64,000 nucleotides of DNA. Origin: Tubulanus polymorphus (lineage: Eukaryota > Animalia > Nemertea). Below, piece after piece: positions 47,238 to 54,880 of the stretch. A program made the position numbers and the translations under genes. Location of the stretch: positions 2,832,778 to 2,896,777 of the forward strand of contig NC_134030.1 of the NCBI RefSeq assembly GCF_964204645.1, written 5' to 3'. Within the stretch, counting starts at the first letter, position 1. Each line of letters opens with the position of its first letter. The notes below the pieces were generated by a model. The model ran no database searches and was not told the DNA's origin. It saw nothing but the letters and a program-made list of their open reading frames with translations.

Positions 47238-48507
47238 TGATCCGCAGCAAGATTCCGTAGTAACTAAAAAATGTTTGTAATGATGGTTTTTGTTTACGTT
47301 GGTGGTTTCTTTATGGGTATCAGACAGCAAACGATGTGTGCAAGTTGTTGTTTGATGCTTTGATCTACCAGCGCTGACAATAAATCAGCCAGGGGTAAAA
47401 ATAATTCTTCCTCGGTTCTTGTGCTGCGATATCTGGCAAACATTCAGAATTATTTTTAAAACTTAAGGATAGACGGAACTGTAATTGGTTGGGTCGGAAC
47501 GATGAGGTGCTTTGATAGTGTGGTTTGTGCAGGGATCTCACTGTTACTTCTTGATACTCCCGACTACTTTCTATAAAAGGAAGAACCGGAAGTATAGGGA
47601 GACATGGTTGTTTTGCTTTATCCTGTAGTATTATAGAGTTAGTTAAATTATAAATGAAAATTGGTATAATAAGTATAGGATGATTTTAGATTTGATAATT
47701 AATTACATTGTATTTCTGAATCAAAAGTTTACTATTGTTGATTGGAAAAAGAAACGATGAGTTTGTTCCATAATCTAGGTGAAAACTAAGTTTTGAAAAT
47801 ATATCTAAATTAAGTATCCTGGATGTTAATTAAGGACAAGACCTTTATAATCGCTTAAGTTTTATGGAAGTTTAATTGTGGCAAATATCAATACTAGCTC
47901 TCTAAGGTTTCTGTTGGTGTACATGTCTGTTGGTAACTCGTAGAGAATAGCTGCTCTCTCAACGAAGATAAGCAAGGAGTGAGTAAATCAAAGCGCGTTA
48001 TGACAGGAGGGTTGGAAAGAAAAGTTACTTTGGCAAATCAGTTTCTCAAATAATTTTAGATTAGCGAATCATTAAGGCTAATTCTACATGTCCAAAACCG
48101 TCATGACAGCTAGGTTGCTGCTCCTTGCCAAAAGTCGAACGGGAGAGTCGGCATTCTAGGAATGCCGATCTTTTCTATAAAAAGAGGCCCGCAGTCTTGA
48201 GAAAGCAGACTTACCAGGGACGCTCGTTAGAGATACTTGAGGTTTGGGTGGAAATACCAGAGTTAAGGCGGGTTACCAACAGTAGTGTACGATAGGAATT
48301 TGGAGTTAGGAATTGGACTGTGTACTATCTGGAGTTATTACTTTCATCAAGGTAAATAAAATCTATATTATTATTATTATATTCAATCAGAATTTCGGCA
48401 TTTTAGTTTGATTATTTGGGTTTGTGCACGGACACGTTCTCTCGCCAGGGACCGATCTTTACGTTTTATATTCAACGATTAAGGAGAGGATTGTGACCGG
48501 TGTATCA
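47238..48507 (+). repeat. 5' LTR (1270 bp)
   Basis: Direct repeat of 53610-54880. TATA-like ctataaaa at ~47571 and ~48175, AATAAA at ~48355. Confidence 0.96.
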
Positions 48508-48508
48508 T

Positions 48509-48526
48509 TGGTGCCGAAACCCGGGA
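48509..48526 (+). other. Primer-binding site complementary to the 3' 18 nt of tRNA-Phe(GAA)
   Basis: TGGTGCCGAAACCCGGGA lies one base after the LTR and is the reverse complement of the metazoan tRNA-Phe 3' end UCCCGGGUUUCGGCACCA. Confidence 0.9.
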
Positions 48527-48679
48527 TATCAATAATCTTCGGTTTACGATAAACTTTTTACATTAATTGTTTAGTTTTGTTCAAATGGTACATATCTTCG
48601 TATGCTCCCACTGTGGTGCGAGGAACGCATTCTCTAAGAAGCGCCGCACTACAACCAACTCAGCATACAAAAAGAAATT

Positions 48680-49043
48680 GTGGGGGTCGAACCCACCTAA
48701 TACCAAACCGTTTGAAATTCCGGTCGAGTTTCGGGAACCATTGTGGGATTCGAACCCACTGCCAACTCCGGTCGTCCCTGTTGAGACATTGCGGGATCCG
48801 AACCCGCGAAGTGCACGACCATTTGAGATTCCGGAGGAACTTCGAGAGCCGTCGTGGGATTCGAACCCACCACTGCACGCTCATGTGTAATACCGGAGGA
48901 GTGTCGGGGACCTCTGTGGGATTCTAACCCACTCGCCATGCAGGTCGACACCGATGGGGCTGCACTACAGCCATTGAGGGGTTCGAACCCTCCACCTTGT
49001 GAATTGCCAAAACCGTCCAGCCAGGATGGGGAATCGAACCTAC
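48680..49043. repeat. Array of seven 17-nt tRNA T-arm-like hairpins (GNGGG-RTYCGAA-CCCNC) in the retroelement leader
   Basis: Units start at 48680, 48743, 48791, 48854, 48916, 48976 and 49027. The reverse complement reads as GTGGGTTCGAATCCCAC (T-psi-C arm / B box). Confidence 0.85.
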
Positions 49044-49115
49044 ATCTGTCTTTTGGGTTGTCAATTTAAAAAAAAAAAATGTTATTTTAGATTAGTATTC
49101 GTTTAAAGATATACA

Positions 49116-50174
49116 ATGTCGACTGGAGGGGAGACGACGTACGGTGCGGGTGGCTCACGGGAACGATCCGCTGTAAGCAACGACACTGTTCTGCAGGCCC
49201 TCTCTGGCCTTCGCGAACAGGTGGACACAGCCACGGCGTTCATGAATTTCTCTTTGCTCCCTAAATTTACGGGACGAGACGACCAGTGCGTCACTGATTG
49301 GTTCAAAGGATTTGACCGTTTGGCCGACCTAAGGGGTTGGAACGATGACGCTAAAAAGAAACAGTTGTATTGGTTTTTGGCTGGCCCGGCCCTAATCTTA
49401 TTTAATGATCTTCGAATTGATCAGGGAACCGATGCGACCGGTGGCAAAGTTGTCACTCCCTGGGAAAATATTGTCCGTGCGTTTTGCGCGCAATTTAGCC
49501 CCACCTCGTGGGCTTTGGTCAAGGAGTCGGCTTTGACGACGATGCGACAGGGGGAGACACAACCGGTCGATAGGTTTGCGGAAGAGATTGATCGTGTGGC
49601 CTCGAGTTTGAAATTTTCGGACCACCAGAAAAAGATGTTACTAATTAATAACTCCCGCCCTGATATTTCTGTCTATTTGTTGTCACAGCGTCCTACGACG
49701 TTTAGGGATGCATGGGAGGCAGCCAGAATGGCGGAGCATATCGAACAACGTAAAGCTCTGTCGTCTCCCAAGGTATCGCAAATTGGGACCGAACCAAATA
49801 AAGCGATGGGTGACGTTATGGCTGAATTACGGGACATGTTCCGCCAAATTATGGACATCCAGAAGTCTACCCGTACTCAGCAGAATGATAGAGCCACATT
49901 TTATAGCGAAAGCCGCCCGTTACAAAGGTCACAGGATGGCCAGGTGGTGTGCTTTCAATGTCACGCCCCTGGTCATTACGCCAGGAATTGCCCGACGTGG
50001 CGTTACGACCAACAAAGGTCACCAAACCGGGACGCATTTCAGCGTGATAATCGCCGTCCCCAAAATGCTAGTAGGGGTCACTTTCGGTCACAGAATCTTG
50101 GGCATGATTCCCAACGGGTTAATCGAACATTTGGTCAGGGAAACGACCGGAGACCTCATCCTATGGACCGATAA
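49116..50174 (+). CDS. gag: Retrotransposon Gag
   Basis: Capsid-like LPKFTG...WF..F...A...GW, RQGETQPV motif and zinc knuckle CFQCHAPGHYARNC. Confidence 0.93.
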   Translation: MSTGGETTYGAGGSRERSAVSNDTVLQALSGLREQVDTATAFMNFSLLPKFTGRDDQCVTDWFKGFDRLADLRGWNDDAKKKQLYWFLAGPALILFNDLRIDQGTDATGGKVVTPWENIVRAFCAQFSPTSWALVKESALTTMRQGETQPVDRFAEEIDRVASSLKFSDHQKKMLLINNSRPDISVYLLSQRPTTFRDAWEAARMAEHIEQRKALSSPKVSQIGTEPNKAMGDVMAELRDMFRQIMDIQKSTRTQQNDRATFYSESRPLQRSQDGQVVCFQCHAPGHYARNCPTWRYDQQRSPNRDAFQRDNRRPQNASRGHFRSQNLGHDSQRVNRTFGQGNDRRPHPMDR

Positions 50175-50184: not shown

Positions 50185-52133
50185 GCGCAATGAATGGTCA
50201 ACTGAGCCCTCGCCGGACTCGTTAATAAGGAGTGATTATTGGTGGGATGACACATATTCGGGTTATCATAGTTATGATGATGACAGTCCGGTAATTGATG
50301 ATTATATTTTTGATGATGATGATGATGATGATTATTATTATTTAGAGGACGATAGGGATGATATATTTGACATGTCATTTGATCAGGGCGACATGCTAGC
50401 TGATTCAGTTGACGATTATTTTGAACCTGAGGGGAACTGTAATGCAGATTACTTAGATGACACTGAACCTTTACATTTAGATAAGTTTATTGATTATCAC
50501 ACTCCTTCATGGGGTGCCGATGACGTATGACATTCAAGATCGTAACTTTGGGGATAGCTGGAGGGACAATTCTCAGTTGTCGTTAGATGGAAATTTTTAT
50601 ATGGATCAGGGATCCAATTTTGAGGACATCTGGAGGGACAATTCCCAGTTGTCGGCTACTTACGAGCATATAAAAAGACACAGGAGGGTTACGTTTAGCG
50701 ATCCGGTTAAATTGCAGGAGGTACGTGCTGATATGGCGTGCTCGGGTGACAATATTAGTATTGATAGGTCACACCCTAGAGGGGTTAATGGTCCGACGGA
50801 TTCGGCAGAAGATGACCTTTTTAGAGATAGGAAGTCTCATTTAGATTGTCACGAAGGCGCTTTTGATCAGTATAGGTACCCAGCAACCTCCGAATCAGCA
50901 ATACAATGTGATCTTGTGTCATCAGATTCAAGTAGTAGTAATAATTCACGATCGGAATGTCTTAATGATCAGAGTAATATGGAAACTATTTTGTCAAAGA
51001 TATCTAGTCAGGAGTCAATGTCGGAGAATTTGTGTCACTCGTTTGAAAGAGGACAGCACTTTCCTGTCACCTCAAATGCCAGCAGTTTTCACCATCCAGT
51101 TGGGGATGGAATGTCCCATGAACAGGACAGAGGTCAAGTTGTCCTCACGTCTAAACCGAATATGCCAATCAACGAAAAGGTTGGGATAGGAGATTCGAAC
51201 TCCGATTGTCAACCAACTGTTCACTGTCAGGAACAATTTCCACCTGTTACGATGACTTTAGGTAACACGTCAACCAACGACATAGGGTCCTTTTCCAGTC
51301 AGAACAACACTATTGGACAGGAGGCTTATTCCCCGTCAATCATGGCAACTGCCGCCAACCGAGTGACTGGTAGTCATTCAGGGACACCGTTAAACATTTT
51401 GATTGATACGGGTGCCGATATTTCTGTAGTGTCAAACAATTACTTCATCAATCATCCTCAGATATCGAATGGCCCTTTGCAGGAGGGACAATTTCAGTCC
51501 GCCCGTGGGGTAGATGGTACTAAGTTTTATTTAAAAGGTGTTATTTCCGTAGATTTTGTATTAGGAAATTTGGACGTGTCACATTCTATGTACGTGGTGG
51601 ATGGAGTCACCTCGGACTTCATTCTCGGAGTTGATTTCCTGGAACGAAACCAGGCAGTTATCGATTATGCTAAAAAGGCTCTCTTGTTGCCAGGCGCCGA
51701 CATAATTTACTTTAGTAATGATGTCATCTTGGGGAAATCTTCGTCGGTTAAAGTCACGCGTATGACTGTTATTCCCCCTTCATGCGATGTCACCGTAGAC
51801 CGTAAGTGGTTAATTGACAAGTCTCAGTCATCGATTGCAGCCTTTGAGCCTGTACATGATTTGAGAATGCGTGATCTCATGAGCGCAAGGTCAGTTGTTA
51901 GCGTCATGCCATCAAGGCATAGGCTTCGAGTCACGAACCCTACGTCACGACACGTCACCCTCTTTGAAGATACGTGTCGTAGTGATTCGTGGACAGATGG
52001 GTGGTCACTTGACCGATCACTCAAAACAGAGGCGAAGTCAGGACAGCTTCCTCGGCCACCGGAGGTGTCTATCACACATGTGGAAGACCCTCAGACGTCA
52101 GACGAAATTTGTAAGTATAATCGAATTATTTAG
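50144..52133 (+). pseudogene. pol: Truncated pol: acidic spacer + retroviral-type aspartic protease; frameshifted near 50525 and deleted downstream
   Basis: LIDTGADISVV and ILGVDFL protease motifs. The -1 frame ORF stops at 50530 while the protease frame overlaps from 50490. No YxDD or DDE motifs are visible before the 3' LTR. Confidence 0.85.
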
Positions 52134-53609
52134 AGTTTGGATCAAGATGCATACGTCCTATTGAAAATTATGAATTGTATACGGTAAGCGTCTCTTCAGT
52201 AGGTTATCGAAATATAATTACATAAGTATTGTGAAACTGAAGTATATATAACGCATTGTTGCCAATGAGTTAACTCCTGATCTGGGTTTAATCTAATACA
52301 GGAGATAAAGACAACTATAAATAAAAGTGAATAATAGCTTGATTGTCGTGATATTGGTTTTTTTTTTTTGCTGAAATATCACTAGTCTCTAGGGTTTATT
52401 ATCTGTAGTCTGAATGGATGTCATTAATTGTCAGTTAGAAAAGAAAGAGTTATGATATGTTTGAATAATCTCTGTATTATTATGATATTAATTGTAGGAT
52501 ACCCGTATCGGATGTGTTGGAATGAGACCGCCGAAGATACGATAGCACTAAGATGGAAGAATGCCTTCTGTCAACCGCAATAGATGTTGATGGGTACCCC
52601 CCTGATAGTGACCATATGGAGATGGGGACTTGTTGGGAGGTATCCTGAGACTCTATTCGACGCAACTGATAGTTTGAAAAACCAGCAACTGGTATGCTCT
52701 GGCCGAGATGGGTGATATTAATTCACCGATTCGTCAAATAACGAAGAAACGGAGCGAATATACGACATACAACAGCGAACTTTGGGCGTTGGTTTTAACG
52801 GGATAGATTCATGCTCGATGTTAGTCATGCGATTCTGGCCATGGTTAGTGGTGTTTGTCACTCGCGAAGACCAGTTATATACTCACAAACTTAAGTGATG
52901 AAGGGTGGACAAAGACACCTGGCCAATGCGATACGAAAAATGAAGAAGAGTGATAATTTCCGTAGACATTTTAGCGGAGTAAAGCCGAGTGTGTTCAAGA
53001 TGGCTCCCGTGTAGTTACATTAACATTCGATGGAATGTTGTTCGCTCAAGCCGTAAGATGCGAATACATTACTGTTCCGTTTCTATATTAACTGTGGAGA
53101 AAAGACTCCGATATAGTAACCGTAGTACTATAGCGTCTATGAATAGCGAGCAAGTATTCAGCTGAACATAAATGTGTTTTGCCGTACTATCAACGTAGCA
53201 GTACGCGCTTCGAGGAACTGCGGTGGATGACGTCATTCGTCCGTCCATGACGCACCTTGTTGTGTCTGGTAGCTGTTGCGTCACTTCGCGGTAAATTCTA
53301 AACTCAAACTGTGAACTGTTTTGTGCTTAACTTTCGAGTGTTTAGTGTGCGGGGACAGCGGTCTCGAATGAACTTTTTTCCGATTGGGTATCCAGAACTT
53401 TAAATGCGGTTTTATGATAAACTATATCCTGAACTTTAATACGCGTTTGTTGTGTTGAACTTTTAAACAGTTACTCGTTGCATGAATTGTTTTTTTTTTT
53501 GTGATTGATGTTCTTTTTCAGGATCTGTCTAGGGAAGTTTCAGCGCGATTTTCATGAGTCAGTCTAAATTCAAAATTTCGGGACGAAATTTAAACTGGAT
53601 AGGGAGTGA

Positions 53610-54880
53610 TGATCCGCAGCAAGATTCCGTAGTAACTAAAAAATGTTTGTAATGATGGTTTTTGTTTACGTTGGTGGTTTCTTTATGGGTATCAGACAGC
53701 AAACGATGTGTGCAAGTTGTTGTTTGATGCTTTGATCTACCAGCGCTGACAATAAATCAGCCAGGGGTAAAAATAATTCTTCCTCGGTTCTTGTGCTGCG
53801 ATATCTGGCAAACATTCAGAATTATTTTTAAAACTTAAGGATAGACGGAACTGTAATTGGTTGGGTCGGAACGATGAGGTGCTTTGATAGTGTGGTTTGT
53901 GCAGGGATCTCACTGTTACTTCTTGATACTCCCGACTACTTTCTATAAAAGGAAGAACCGGAAGTATAGGGAGACATGGTTGTTTTGCTTTATCCTGTAG
54001 TATTATAGAGTTAGTTAAATTATAAATGAAAATTGGTATAATAAGTATAGGATGATTTTAGATTTGATAATTAATTACATTGTATTTCTGAATCAAAAGT
54101 TTACTATTGTTGATTGGAAAAAGAAACGATGAGTTTGTTCCATAATCTAGGTGAAAACTAAGTTTTGAAAATATATCTAAATTAAGTATCCTGGATGTTA
54201 ATTAAGGACAAGACCTTTATAATCGCTTAAGTTTTATGGAAGTTTAATTGTGGCAAATATCAATACTAGCTCTCTAAGGTTTCTGTTGGTGTACATGTCT
54301 GTTGGTAACTCGTAGAGAATAGCTGCTCTCTCAACGAAGATAAGCAAGGAGTGAGTAAATCAAAGCGCGTTATGACAGGAGGGTTGGAAAGAAAAGTTAC
54401 TTTGGCAAATCAGTTTCTCAAATAATTTTAGATTAGCGAATCATTAAGGCTAATTCTACATGTCCAAAACCGTCATGACAGCTAGGTTGCTGCTCCTTGC
54501 CAAAAGTCGAACGGGAGAGTCGGCATTCTAGGAATGCCGATCTTTTCTATAAAAAGAGGCCCGCAGTCTTGAGAAAGCAGACTTACCAGGGACGCTCGTT
54601 AGAGATACTTGAGGTTTGGGTGGAAATACCAGAGTTAAGGCGGGTTACCAACAGTAGTGTACGATAGGAATTTGGAGTTAGGAATTGGACTGTGTACTAT
54701 CTGGAGTTATTACTTTCATCAAGGTAAATAAAATCTATATTATTATTATTATATTCAATCAGAATTTCGGCATTTTAGTTTGATTATTTGGGTTTGTGCA
54801 CGGACACGTTCTCTCGCCAGGGACCGATCTTTACGTTTTTATATTCAACGATTAAGGAGAGGATTGTGACCGGTGTATCA
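53610..54880 (+). repeat. 3' LTR (1271 bp)
   Basis: Identical to the 5' LTR by eye except one extra T in a T-run (~54836-54840). Confidence 0.96.

What the first reader, a model, noticed from the sequence alone, without database searches (positions are those of the whole stretch)
48680..49043. Seven covarying anti-tRNA T-arm hairpins arrayed between the PBS and gag of an LTR retrotransposon
Seen: units GTGGG-GGTCGAA-CCCAC (48680), GTGGG-ATTCGAA-CCCAC (48743, 48854), GCGGG-ATCCGAA-CCCGC (48791), GTGGG-ATTCTAA-CCCAC (48916), GAGGG-GTTCGAA-CCCTC (48976) and a weaker TGGGG-AATCGAA-CCTAC (49027). The second stem pair switches T-A, C-G, A-T with pairing kept (compensatory change), while the 31-46-nt linkers diverge much more. 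Established: a 5-bp stem with a 7-nt TTCRANY loop is the tRNA T-psi-C arm / Pol III B box, and here it lies on the minus strand, so the element RNA is antisense to T-arms. Inference: the array may (a) anneal to or sequester tRNAs or tRNA-derived fragments (a multi-copy primer-activation or decoy platform against tRF silencing), (b) act as clustered TFIIIC sites (insulator or antisense Pol III promoter), or (c) record repeated capture of different tRNA 3' ends during reverse transcription. An eighth similar hairpin (GGAG-ATTCGAA-CTCC, ~51189-51203) sits inside pol. I do not know of such an array in a Gypsy leader.
Basis: partly seen in the sequence, partly recalled or inferred. Interest (0 to 1): 0.8.

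Follow-up and report, generated by a model that had tools for sequence, protein, structure and literature searches.

The report
Coding repeats doubling as RNA hairpins
The seven tRNA-arm-like hairpins are real, but they are the codons of a repeated peptide motif (L-W/R-D-S-N-P) in a small extra gene that this gypsy-type retrotransposon carries ahead of gag; codon choice shows the hairpin stems are kept as well, though what they do is untested.

Summary
Seven 17-nt units sit at the stated coordinates between a tRNA-Phe primer site and gag. Six have perfect 5-bp stems. The commonest unit is the exact reverse complement of the T arm of host tRNA-Leu.

The stretch is not a non-coding leader. Units 1-4 lie in an ORF (ORF0, 48585-48890) and read xxG-TGG-GAT-TCG-AAC-CCA-Cxx, which is L-W-D-S-N-P. 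Units 5-7 read the same motif in another frame, after a stop. Sister families in the same genome keep ORF0 open (180-218 aa). Their ORF0 has a conserved head and tail, dN/dS of about 0.2, and a second repeat gene, ORF0b.

Codon choice also keeps the stem:
- Stem codons are identical in 19 of 21 cases between families, against 83 of 152 elsewhere (p=0.0016).
- Codon resampling gives 1.6 perfect stems where 17 of 26 are seen.
- The proline wobble base tracks the first base of the W/R/G codon (U-A, A-U, C-G, G-C).

tRNA-related readings fail:
- No similarity to tRNA exists beyond the 17-mer.
- The equivalent of invariant C56 is the most variable loop base.
- 13 of 35 units lose the B-box core.

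The purpose of the hairpins is unknown; I favour a cis-acting RNA signal. This scan reached the same reading on other copies in this genome.

The parts
47238..48507 (+). 5' LTR (1270 nt, TG...CA)
   Evidence: Identical to 53610-54880 apart from a 1-nt indel. The flanks read ATAT on both sides, a possible 4-bp target duplication.
48509..48527 (+). Primer binding site complementary to the 3' end of host tRNA-Phe(GAA)
   Evidence: The pattern of the tRNA 3' end occurs 15 times in the genome. The two of the three fetched places that ARAGORN recognised as tRNA genes are both tRNA-Phe(gaa).
48585..48890 (+). ORF0 as it stands in this copy (101 aa, ATG to TAA). It contains units 1-4 read as LWGSNP, LWDSNP, LRDPNP and SWDSNP.
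   Evidence: It is homologous to the open 180-218 aa ORF0 of sister families. The stop is present in 17 of 18 copies of this family.
48680..48696 (+). Unit 1, GTGGG-GGTCGAA-CCCAC
48743..48759 (+). Unit 2, GTGGG-ATTCGAA-CCCAC, the exact reverse complement of the host tRNA-Leu T arm
48791..48807 (+). Unit 3, GCGGG-ATCCGAA-CCCGC (C-G at the second pair; the B-box core is lost)
48854..48870 (+). Unit 4, GTGGG-ATTCGAA-CCCAC
48854..49069 (+). Stop-free stretch in another frame (72 codons, no ATG) that reads units 5-7 as LWDSNP, LRGSNP and GESNL. It is a relic of the once continuous repeat gene and weakly resembles the end of ORF0b.
48916..48932 (+). Unit 5, GTGGG-ATTCTAA-CCCAC (serine TCT; the C56 equivalent is lost)
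48976..48992 (+). Unit 6, GAGGG-GTTCGAA-CCCTC (A-T at the second pair)
49027..49043 (+). Unit 7, TGGGG-AATCGAA-CCTAC, degenerate
49116..50174 (+). gag (Retrotrans_gag plus CCHC zinc knuckle)
50490..52133 (+). ORF with a retroviral-type aspartyl protease. Downstream, RT/RNase H/integrase are missing, with a deletion junction near 52303.
51188..51204 (+). Eighth hairpin, AGGAG-ATTCGAA-CTCCG. It is in the same codon register and encodes G-D-S-N-S.
   Evidence: The 17-mer is unchanged in four copies whose flanks are 84-99% identical.
53610..54880 (+). 3' LTR, preceded by a purine-rich tract (53595-53609)

Best explanation
The array is the repeat region of an accessory protein-coding gene (ORF0) that this Ty3/gypsy-type lineage carries between the PBS and gag. 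Each 17-nt unit is the codon string xxG TGG GAT TCG AAC CCA Cxx for the peptide motif L-W/R-D-S-N-P. In this copy and its family the gene is cut by a stop after unit 4, and units 5-7 survive in another frame. The gene's conserved tail and two further accessory ORFs of the sister families are absent. On top of the coding constraint, the 5-bp stem is maintained at the nucleotide level by the choice of synonymous codons and of the first base of the next codon. The same module therefore serves as a peptide motif and as a hairpin. Shown: the coding nature, purifying selection on the protein, excess conservation of the stem's synonymous sites, and covariation at one pair. Inferred: the hairpins act in the sense genomic RNA as a repeated cis-acting signal, for example binding sites for the element's Gag or accessory protein in packaging or dimerisation. 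On this view the T-arm look is a by-product or a relic of origin, not the selected feature.
For: Coding:
- ORF0 is open in 14 of 15 full-length copies of the sister families B and C.
- The head (CSHCGAKNAFSKKRR) and tail are conserved.
- B versus C dN/dS is 0.22/1.11 for ORF0, 0.15/2.27 for its tail and 0.15/0.84 for ORF0b.
- Five of the six unit spacings in the window are multiples of 3.
- The layout ORF0-ORF0b-ORFx-gag-PR-RT-RH is seen in B and C.

Stem kept beyond coding:
- At conserved residues between B and C, the codons that contribute stem bases are identical in 19 of 21 cases, against 83 of 152 elsewhere (Fisher p=0.0016).
- In 37 distinct units, Asn is AAC 37/37 and Leu(-1) ends in G 29/30, while its synonymous first base varies (TTG 23, CTG 6).
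- The residue after Pro varies (P/L/R/H) but starts with C in 32 of 37 units.
- Pro two codons upstream uses all four codons.
- Elsewhere in the element AAC is 39%, CCA is 25% and Leu-xxG is 46%.
- Resampling codons for the same peptides gives a mean of 1.6 perfect 5-bp stems (maximum 6 in 2000 trials), against 17 of 26 observed.
- The second pair is UA 20, AU 4, CG 3, GC 2, UG 2 and unpaired 4. None of 500 shuffles reaches the observed pairing or covariation score.

Cis-role hint: the deleted, RT-less lineage to which this copy belongs has amplified to at least 16 copies. Its A-type leader kept seven hairpin units while losing the ORF0 tail, most of ORF0b, and ORFx.
Against: - Only one of the five pairs covaries, and the units are paralogues, so independent events are few (about five unit lineages).
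- The covarying pair is broken in some family-B copies (CGG..CCC, CGG..CCA, AGG..CCC).
- The whole array folds no better than shuffled sequence on either strand (z -0.5 and -0.6), and in the minimum-energy fold only two units form their own hairpin.
- A 5-bp stem is weak.
- Compensatory-looking changes can arise without selection, by template switching within quasi-palindromes during replication or reverse transcription.
- G.U versus A.C mismatches do not tell which strand folds.
- No experiment or expression data bear on translation of ORF0 or on any hairpin function.
- The packaging/dimerisation role is inference only.
Confidence: 0.6

Rival explanations
1. This is a pure coding repeat. The hairpin is a by-product of the codons that happened to found the repeat. 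It is kept alike by recent duplication, by homogenisation among units, or by quasi-palindrome-templated mutation, and it has no function of its own.
For: W (TGG), P (CCN) and N/D codons fix three of the five pairs through the peptide alone. Arrays change unit number by duplication, with 111-nt and 63-nt duplications in B and C copies. Several copies carry broken second and outer pairs. There is no thermodynamic signal for the array. Inserted copies decay in stems as fast as in linkers.
Against: Synonymous divergence between families is near saturation (dS about 1), yet stem codons stay identical in 19 of 21 cases against 55% elsewhere. The proline codon only 4 nt upstream of the stem uses all four codons, so homogenisation would have to stop exactly at the stem edge. 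The residue after Pro varies while its first base stays C. Three non-U-A pair types arose with matching partners.
Confidence: 0.25
2. Anti-T-arm platform: the sense RNA pairs with the T arms of tRNAs or with tRNA fragments. It would act as primer activation, tRNA recruitment, or a decoy against tRF silencing.
For: The commonest unit is 17 of 17 complementary to the T arm of host tRNA-Leu (CAG/TAG/AAG). A loop that happens to match a T-loop complement is unlikely by chance.
Against: The primer is tRNA-Phe, whose T arm differs. Complementarity ends at the 17-mer. The base opposite invariant C56 is the most variable loop base (G 25, T 6, A 4), and the bases opposite A58 also vary. 3' tRFs include the acceptor strand and CCA, which no unit matches. 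The T arm of a mature tRNA is folded and modified (general knowledge).
Confidence: 0.06
3. The units are clustered TFIIIC sites (B boxes) on the DNA. They would act as an insulator or an antisense Pol III promoter.
For: Five of the seven units in the window, and 22 of 35 distinct units, carry GGTTCRANNCC on the minus strand.
Against: 13 of 35 units lose C56 or A58, the critical B-box bases, while the variable position 59 is conserved. The covarying pair (tRNA 50-64) lies outside the B box. No A box or tRNA-like body is present. Inserted copies do not protect the motif.
Confidence: 0.04
4. The units are a record of repeated capture of different tRNA 3' ends during reverse transcription, or else an ordinary non-coding minisatellite.
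For: The stem variants superficially resemble different tRNAs, and the array changes in copy number.
Against: No TGG-N-acceptor complement lies upstream of any unit, and the flanks are unrelated to tRNA-Leu. There is no Rfam tRNA hit at E up to 10. The linkers are homologous to one another as peptide (FEIPEEYREP...), and the whole array is in frame in sister families under purifying selection.
Confidence: 0.03

Closest known systems
Cis-acting RNA structures embedded in the coding or leader sequence of retroelements and RNA viruses (retroviral Psi/dimerisation stem-loops between PBS and gag; Ty1 and Ty3 cis elements inside coding sequence). From general knowledge.
   Same: The position is just downstream of the PBS. 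The stem-loops are short, overlap protein-coding sequence, and show suppressed synonymous change.
   Different: Here one 17-nt module is repeated 7-12 times and coincides exactly with a repeated peptide motif. No packaging or dimerisation activity has been tested, and the loops are not known NC-binding motifs.
Additional ORFs in LTR retrotransposons, for example those captured by bdelloid rotifer elements (PMC5408684, listed; only its title and abstract were read)
   Same: Extra genes beside gag and pol in Ty3/gypsy-type elements, lineage-specific and of unknown function.
   Different: ORF0, ORF0b and ORFx lie upstream of gag. ORF0 has no relatives in a 5.8-billion-protein word search, and a search of 1.84 billion cluster representatives gave only spurious hits. 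It matches no Pfam family and is predicted disordered.
tRNA T arm / Pol III B box
   Same: On the minus strand there is a 5-bp stem and a 7-nt loop reading TTCGAAT, with an exact 17-nt identity to the host tRNA-Leu T arm.
   Different: There is no other tRNA part. The T-loop invariants (C56, A58) are not protected, and conservation follows codons and the stem, not the B-box consensus.
Su(Hw) insulator array in the 5' untranslated leader of Drosophila gypsy (general knowledge)
   Same: An array of about 350 bp made of a short repeated motif with variable spacers, lying between the PBS and gag of a gypsy-type element.
   Different: The Drosophila array is a set of non-coding DNA-binding sites without hairpin symmetry. 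The present array is translated sequence with covarying stems.

Membership tests
Ty3/gypsy-type LTR retrotransposon | Direct LTRs ending TG...CA, a PBS next to the 5' LTR, and a purine tract before the 3' LTR | tested here: met
   The LTRs are 47238-48507 and 53610-54880 and are identical but for one indel. The PBS matches host tRNA-Phe.
Ty3/gypsy-type LTR retrotransposon | gag with a CCHC knuckle, then the pol order PR-RT-RNase H-(IN) | tested here: inconclusive
   gag and PR are present in the window. RT followed by RNase H was seen in a relative. Integrase was not examined. The window copy lacks RT, RH and IN through a deletion.
Protein-coding accessory gene (ORF0) | The frame is kept open across diverged copies, with dN/dS well below 1 | tested here: met
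   14 of 15 full copies in families B and C have no stop. dN/dS is about 0.2, and 0.06 in the tail. In the window's own family the frame is interrupted after unit 4.
Structured cis-acting RNA element | Compensatory base-pair changes | tested here: met
   One of five pairs shows UA, AU, CG and GC. None of 500 shuffles reaches the observed score. There are few independent events, and some copies break the pair.
Structured cis-acting RNA element | Suppressed synonymous change at paired bases | tested here: met
   19 of 21 against 83 of 152, p=0.0016. Codon resampling gives 1.6 perfect stems against 17 of 26 observed.
Structured cis-acting RNA element | Folding energy better than shuffled sequence | tested here: not met
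   z is -0.49 on the plus strand and -0.56 on the minus strand.
tRNA gene or tRNA-derived sequence | A cloverleaf, or at least acceptor/anticodon parts, flanking the T arm | tested here: not met
   ARAGORN finds none. Rfam gives no tRNA match at E up to 10. The flanks are unrelated to host tRNA-Leu.
Pol III B box / TFIIIC site | The GGTTCRANNCC consensus with C56 and A58 conserved | tested here: not met
   The consensus is present in 22 of 35 units. The C56 equivalent is the most variable loop base, and 13 units lose the core.
Pol III B box / TFIIIC site | TFIIIC occupancy | not testable with these tools
   This needs ChIP.
Minisatellite (non-coding tandem repeat) | Head-to-tail copies detectable as a tandem array, with no frame constraint | tested here: not met
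   TRF reports no array. Spacings are multiples of 3, and the array is an ORF in the sister families.

The most novel reading that the evidence does not exclude
One repeated 17-nt module is selected twice over. It is a short linear peptide motif in a disordered accessory protein, a multivalent W/R-D-S-N-P platform for some host or element partner. It is also an RNA hairpin that serves as a repeated cis signal of the genomic RNA, for example for packaging or dimerisation. That second role would explain why the RT-less, trans-mobilised derivative kept the hairpin units while losing the rest of the accessory cassette. The T-arm identity with tRNA-Leu could then reflect the origin of the module, or a residual interaction with T-arm-binding factors.
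Probability: 0.3. Interest if true: 0.7.

Novelty: new variant of a known kind. Interest (0 to 1): 0.5.

Why it matters
If the dual constraint holds, this would be a compact natural example of a repeated module that is read both as a peptide motif and as an RNA structure, inside an orphan accessory gene of an animal-type gypsy element. It would give a handle on two open questions. One is what the poorly understood extra genes upstream of gag do. The other is where the cis-acting packaging signals of such elements lie. It is also a caution: tRNA-like or B-box-like hairpin arrays can be produced by codons. Frame and synonymous-site tests are needed before tRNA biology is invoked.

Tried and rejected
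- Tandem Repeats Finder found no array.
- ARAGORN on the window and Rfam at E up to 10 found no tRNA. The only hits were 17-nt chance matches to a hairpin of a plastid 3'UTR family.
- Folding the whole array on both strands gave no excess stability.
- For ORF0, the following all gave nothing:
  - Pfam gave only a sub-threshold DUF7577 match, and nothing for ORF0b or ORFx.
  - The 5.8-billion-protein word search found nothing.
  - The ESM Atlas gave no credible neighbour.
  - The profile search of 1.84 billion representatives gave six weak hits. They are WD40 repeats, other repetitive proteins, and what look like translated repeat arrays, so I treat them as spurious.
  - The AlphaFold2 model has mean pLDDT 40 and shows no fold.
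- Literature searches for a T-arm or B-box array in a retrotransposon leader, and for the motif WDSNP, found nothing relevant.
- The within-family comparison of stems and linkers lacks power, because the 18 copies are nearly identical over units 2-7. Singletons hit stems at least as often as linkers.
- I tried to tell sense-strand from antisense-strand pairing by comparing G.U with A.C mismatches. The counts are about equal, so the test is uninformative.
Only tRNA-Leu and tRNA-Phe examples were read.
- A -1 frameshift site joining the two frames was considered. No slippery heptamer is visible in the overlap 48854-48890, so it was not pursued.
The alignment tools print majority lines, and these were not used.

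Full report
**Observation.** Units 1-6 are perfect 5-bp stems closing 7-nt loops. Unit 7 is degenerate. Start-to-start spacings are 63, 48, 63, 62, 60 and 51 nt. The second stem pair is T-A in units 1, 2, 4 and 5, C-G in unit 3, and A-T in unit 6. A hairpin scan of the whole 64-kb window finds the six good units and one more hairpin at 51188-51204. Its only other hits are five AT-rich chance matches. Tandem Repeats Finder sees no array, because the linkers are too diverged.

**The element.** The LTRs are 47238-48507 and 53610-54880. They are identical but for a single-base indel and end TG...CA. One base after the 5' LTR lies a 19-nt PBS (48509-48527). It is complementary to the 3' end of host tRNA-Phe(GAA). 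The corresponding tRNA pattern occurs 15 times in the genome. I fetched three of those places. ARAGORN recognised two as tRNA genes, and both are tRNA-Phe. gag (49116-50174) matches Retrotrans_gag and a CCHC knuckle. The next long ORF carries a retroviral aspartyl protease. RT, RNase H and integrase are missing.

Comparison with relatives places a deletion junction near 52303. At least 16 other copies share that junction, while full-length relatives have pol frames of about 1600 aa. The window copy is therefore a young, non-autonomous member of an amplified deletion lineage.

**The array is coding sequence.** An ATG at 48585, in a good context, opens a frame that runs through units 1-4 to a TAA at 48888-48890. 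It reads LWGSNP, LWDSNP, LRDPNP and SWDSNP. Units 5-7 read LWDSNP, LRGSNP and GESNL in another frame, which is stop-free from 48854 to 49069. Every unit has the same codon register: xxG TGG GAT TCG AAC CCA Cxx. Five of the six spacings are multiples of three.

A DNA search of the genome found at least 30 related leaders. Eighteen belong to the window's family (A), and 17 of them share the stop after unit 4. In the remaining copy the frames are continuous through all seven units.

Two sister families keep a longer gene. Family B has an ORF0 of 181-218 aa and family C one of 180-202 aa. Both have a conserved head (CSHCGAKNAFSKKRR), six to eight motifs, and a conserved tail of about 45 aa. Fourteen of fifteen full-length matches have no stop. 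Between B and C, dN/dS is 0.22/1.11 for ORF0 and 0.15/2.27 for its tail. For ORF0b, a second repeat gene just downstream, it is 0.15/0.84. B and C share the layout ORF0-ORF0b-ORFx-gag-PR-RT-RNase H. Family A has lost the ORF0 tail, most of ORF0b, and ORFx. Its units 5-6 weakly resemble the end of ORF0b.

ORF0 has no recognisable relatives:
- Pfam gave nothing above threshold.
- The word search of 5.8 billion proteins found nothing.
- The ESM Atlas gave no credible neighbour.
- The profile search of 1.84 billion representatives returned only WD40 repeats, other repetitive proteins, and what look like translated repeat arrays.
- AlphaFold2 gives mean pLDDT 40, which suggests a disordered protein or too thin an alignment.

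**The peptide alone does not make the hairpin.** The peptide fixes three pairs: GG of TGG with CC of CCN, and G of GAT with C of AAC if AAC is used. The other bases are free at the protein level. I collected 37 distinct units from representative copies of the three families.
- Asn is AAC in 37 of 37 units, against 39% AAC elsewhere in the element.
- The leucine before W ends in G in 29 of 30 units, against 46% xxG elsewhere. Its synonymous first base, just outside the stem, varies (TTG 23, CTG 6).
- The residue after proline varies (P 15, L 11, R 6, H 1), yet its first base is C in 32 of 37 units. Every leucine there is CTN.
- The proline inside the stem is CCA whenever the first codon is TGG, with few exceptions. 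The proline two codons upstream of W uses all four codons (CCA 11, CCT 7, CCG 3, CCC 3).

Between families B and C, at residues that are conserved, the stem codons are identical in 19 of 21 cases, against 83 of 152 elsewhere (Fisher p=0.0016). Synonymous divergence between these families is about 1. I also redrew codons for the same peptides from the element's own usage. That gives on average 1.6 perfect stems, with a maximum of 6 in 2000 trials, against 17 of 26 observed.

On an alignment of 35 distinct units, 93% of cells pair. The second pair is UA 20, AU 4, CG 3, GC 2, UG 2 and unpaired 4. No shuffle out of 500 reaches the observed pairing or covariation score. The proline wobble base therefore follows the first base of the W/R/G codon, and a peptide constraint cannot explain that.

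Caveats:
- Only one pair covaries.
- The units are paralogues, so the independent events number about five.
- Some family-B copies carry broken pairs.
- The array as a whole is no more stable than shuffled sequence.
- Templated mutation in quasi-palindromes could mimic compensation.

I rate the dual constraint as probable, not proven.

**tRNA-related readings.** The commonest unit occurs 103 times in the genome. About two thirds of these are in copies of this element. Among the rest are tRNA-Leu genes (CAG, TAG, AAG), whose T arm is its exact reverse complement. The match stops at the 17-mer. The acceptor strand and variable region of tRNA-Leu have no counterpart beside any unit. No unit is preceded by a TGG-N-acceptor complement of the kind seen at the true PBS. 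Neither ARAGORN nor Rfam sees a tRNA. This rules out captured tRNA 3' ends.

For pairing with T arms, and for TFIIIC binding, the conservation pattern is the wrong way round. The base opposite the invariant C56 is the serine wobble and is the most variable loop base (G 25, T 6, A 4). The bases opposite A58 and R57 also vary. The base opposite the variable position 59 is conserved. Thirteen of 35 units, including units 3 and 5 of the window, lose the B-box core. The primer tRNA is Phe, and its T arm is different.

**Decay of inserted copies.** Among the 18 family-A copies, singleton changes hit stems (14 in 70 sites) at least as often as linkers (29 in 245 sites). What it shows is that insertions are not protected by the host. 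It argues against a host-level DNA role and says nothing about selection on the replicating element.

**Reading.** The stretch is the repeat region of an orphan accessory gene, truncated in this family. Its codons also maintain a short hairpin. What the hairpin does is open. I favour a repeated cis-acting signal in the sense genomic RNA, for three reasons. This is where retroelements keep packaging and dimerisation signals. Coding sequence that overlaps such signals shows this kind of synonymous constraint. And the RT-less derivative's A-type leader kept seven hairpin units while dropping the rest of the accessory cassette. This last step is inference.

Other follow-up agents of this scan reached the same coding-plus-hairpin reading on other copies in this genome (s1-527001, s1-526871). 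I treated those notes as leads and repeated the tests on this window's own family and its relatives.

**Limits.**
- The host species was not identified.
- The one step that would alter a mobile copy is referred.

Noticed in passing
window about 52303, and genome places listed: The window copy lacks RT, RNase H and integrase through an internal deletion. At least 16 copies share the same junction, and these carry three different leader types (A, B, C). An RT-less derivative has therefore amplified and recombined with different leaders. Full-length relatives have pol frames of 1588-1699 aa.
   Followed up: partly
L003:1375-1501; also L010, L013, L015, L016, L018 (alignment): Several copies carry two to four tandem copies of a unit of about 32 nt made of the last bases of the LTR plus the PBS. 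This may be a trace of aberrant strand transfer.
   Followed up: no
window 51188-51204: The eighth hairpin (AGGAG-ATTCGAA-CTCCG) is in the same codon register as the array and encodes G-D-S-N-S upstream of the protease. The 17-mer is unchanged in four copies whose flanks differ by up to 16%.
   Followed up: partly
L031:5722-6159, L031:6255-7049 and the matching parts of L032 and L033: Sister families carry two more ORFs between ORF0 and gag. ORF0b (146 aa) has 2-4 further WDSNP hairpin units. ORFx (265 aa) is Ser/Pro-rich and has no Pfam match. They are 50-55% identical between families whose gag is 82-92% identical.
   Followed up: partly
window 49068-49080: An A-tract lies just before gag, and its length and composition differ among copies.
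   Followed up: no
L069, L072 (genome places C2:1903670, C6:22221321): The tRNA-Leu T-arm 17-mer also occurs outside recognisable tRNA genes and outside this element. These may be tRNA-derived repeats or pseudogenes.
   Followed up: no
window 48660-48951, minus strand: The units are near-palindromes, so the minus strand also stays open (ORFs of 74 and 84 aa reading GSNPT). This is a mirror artefact of the repeat and not evidence of an antisense gene.
   Followed up: no
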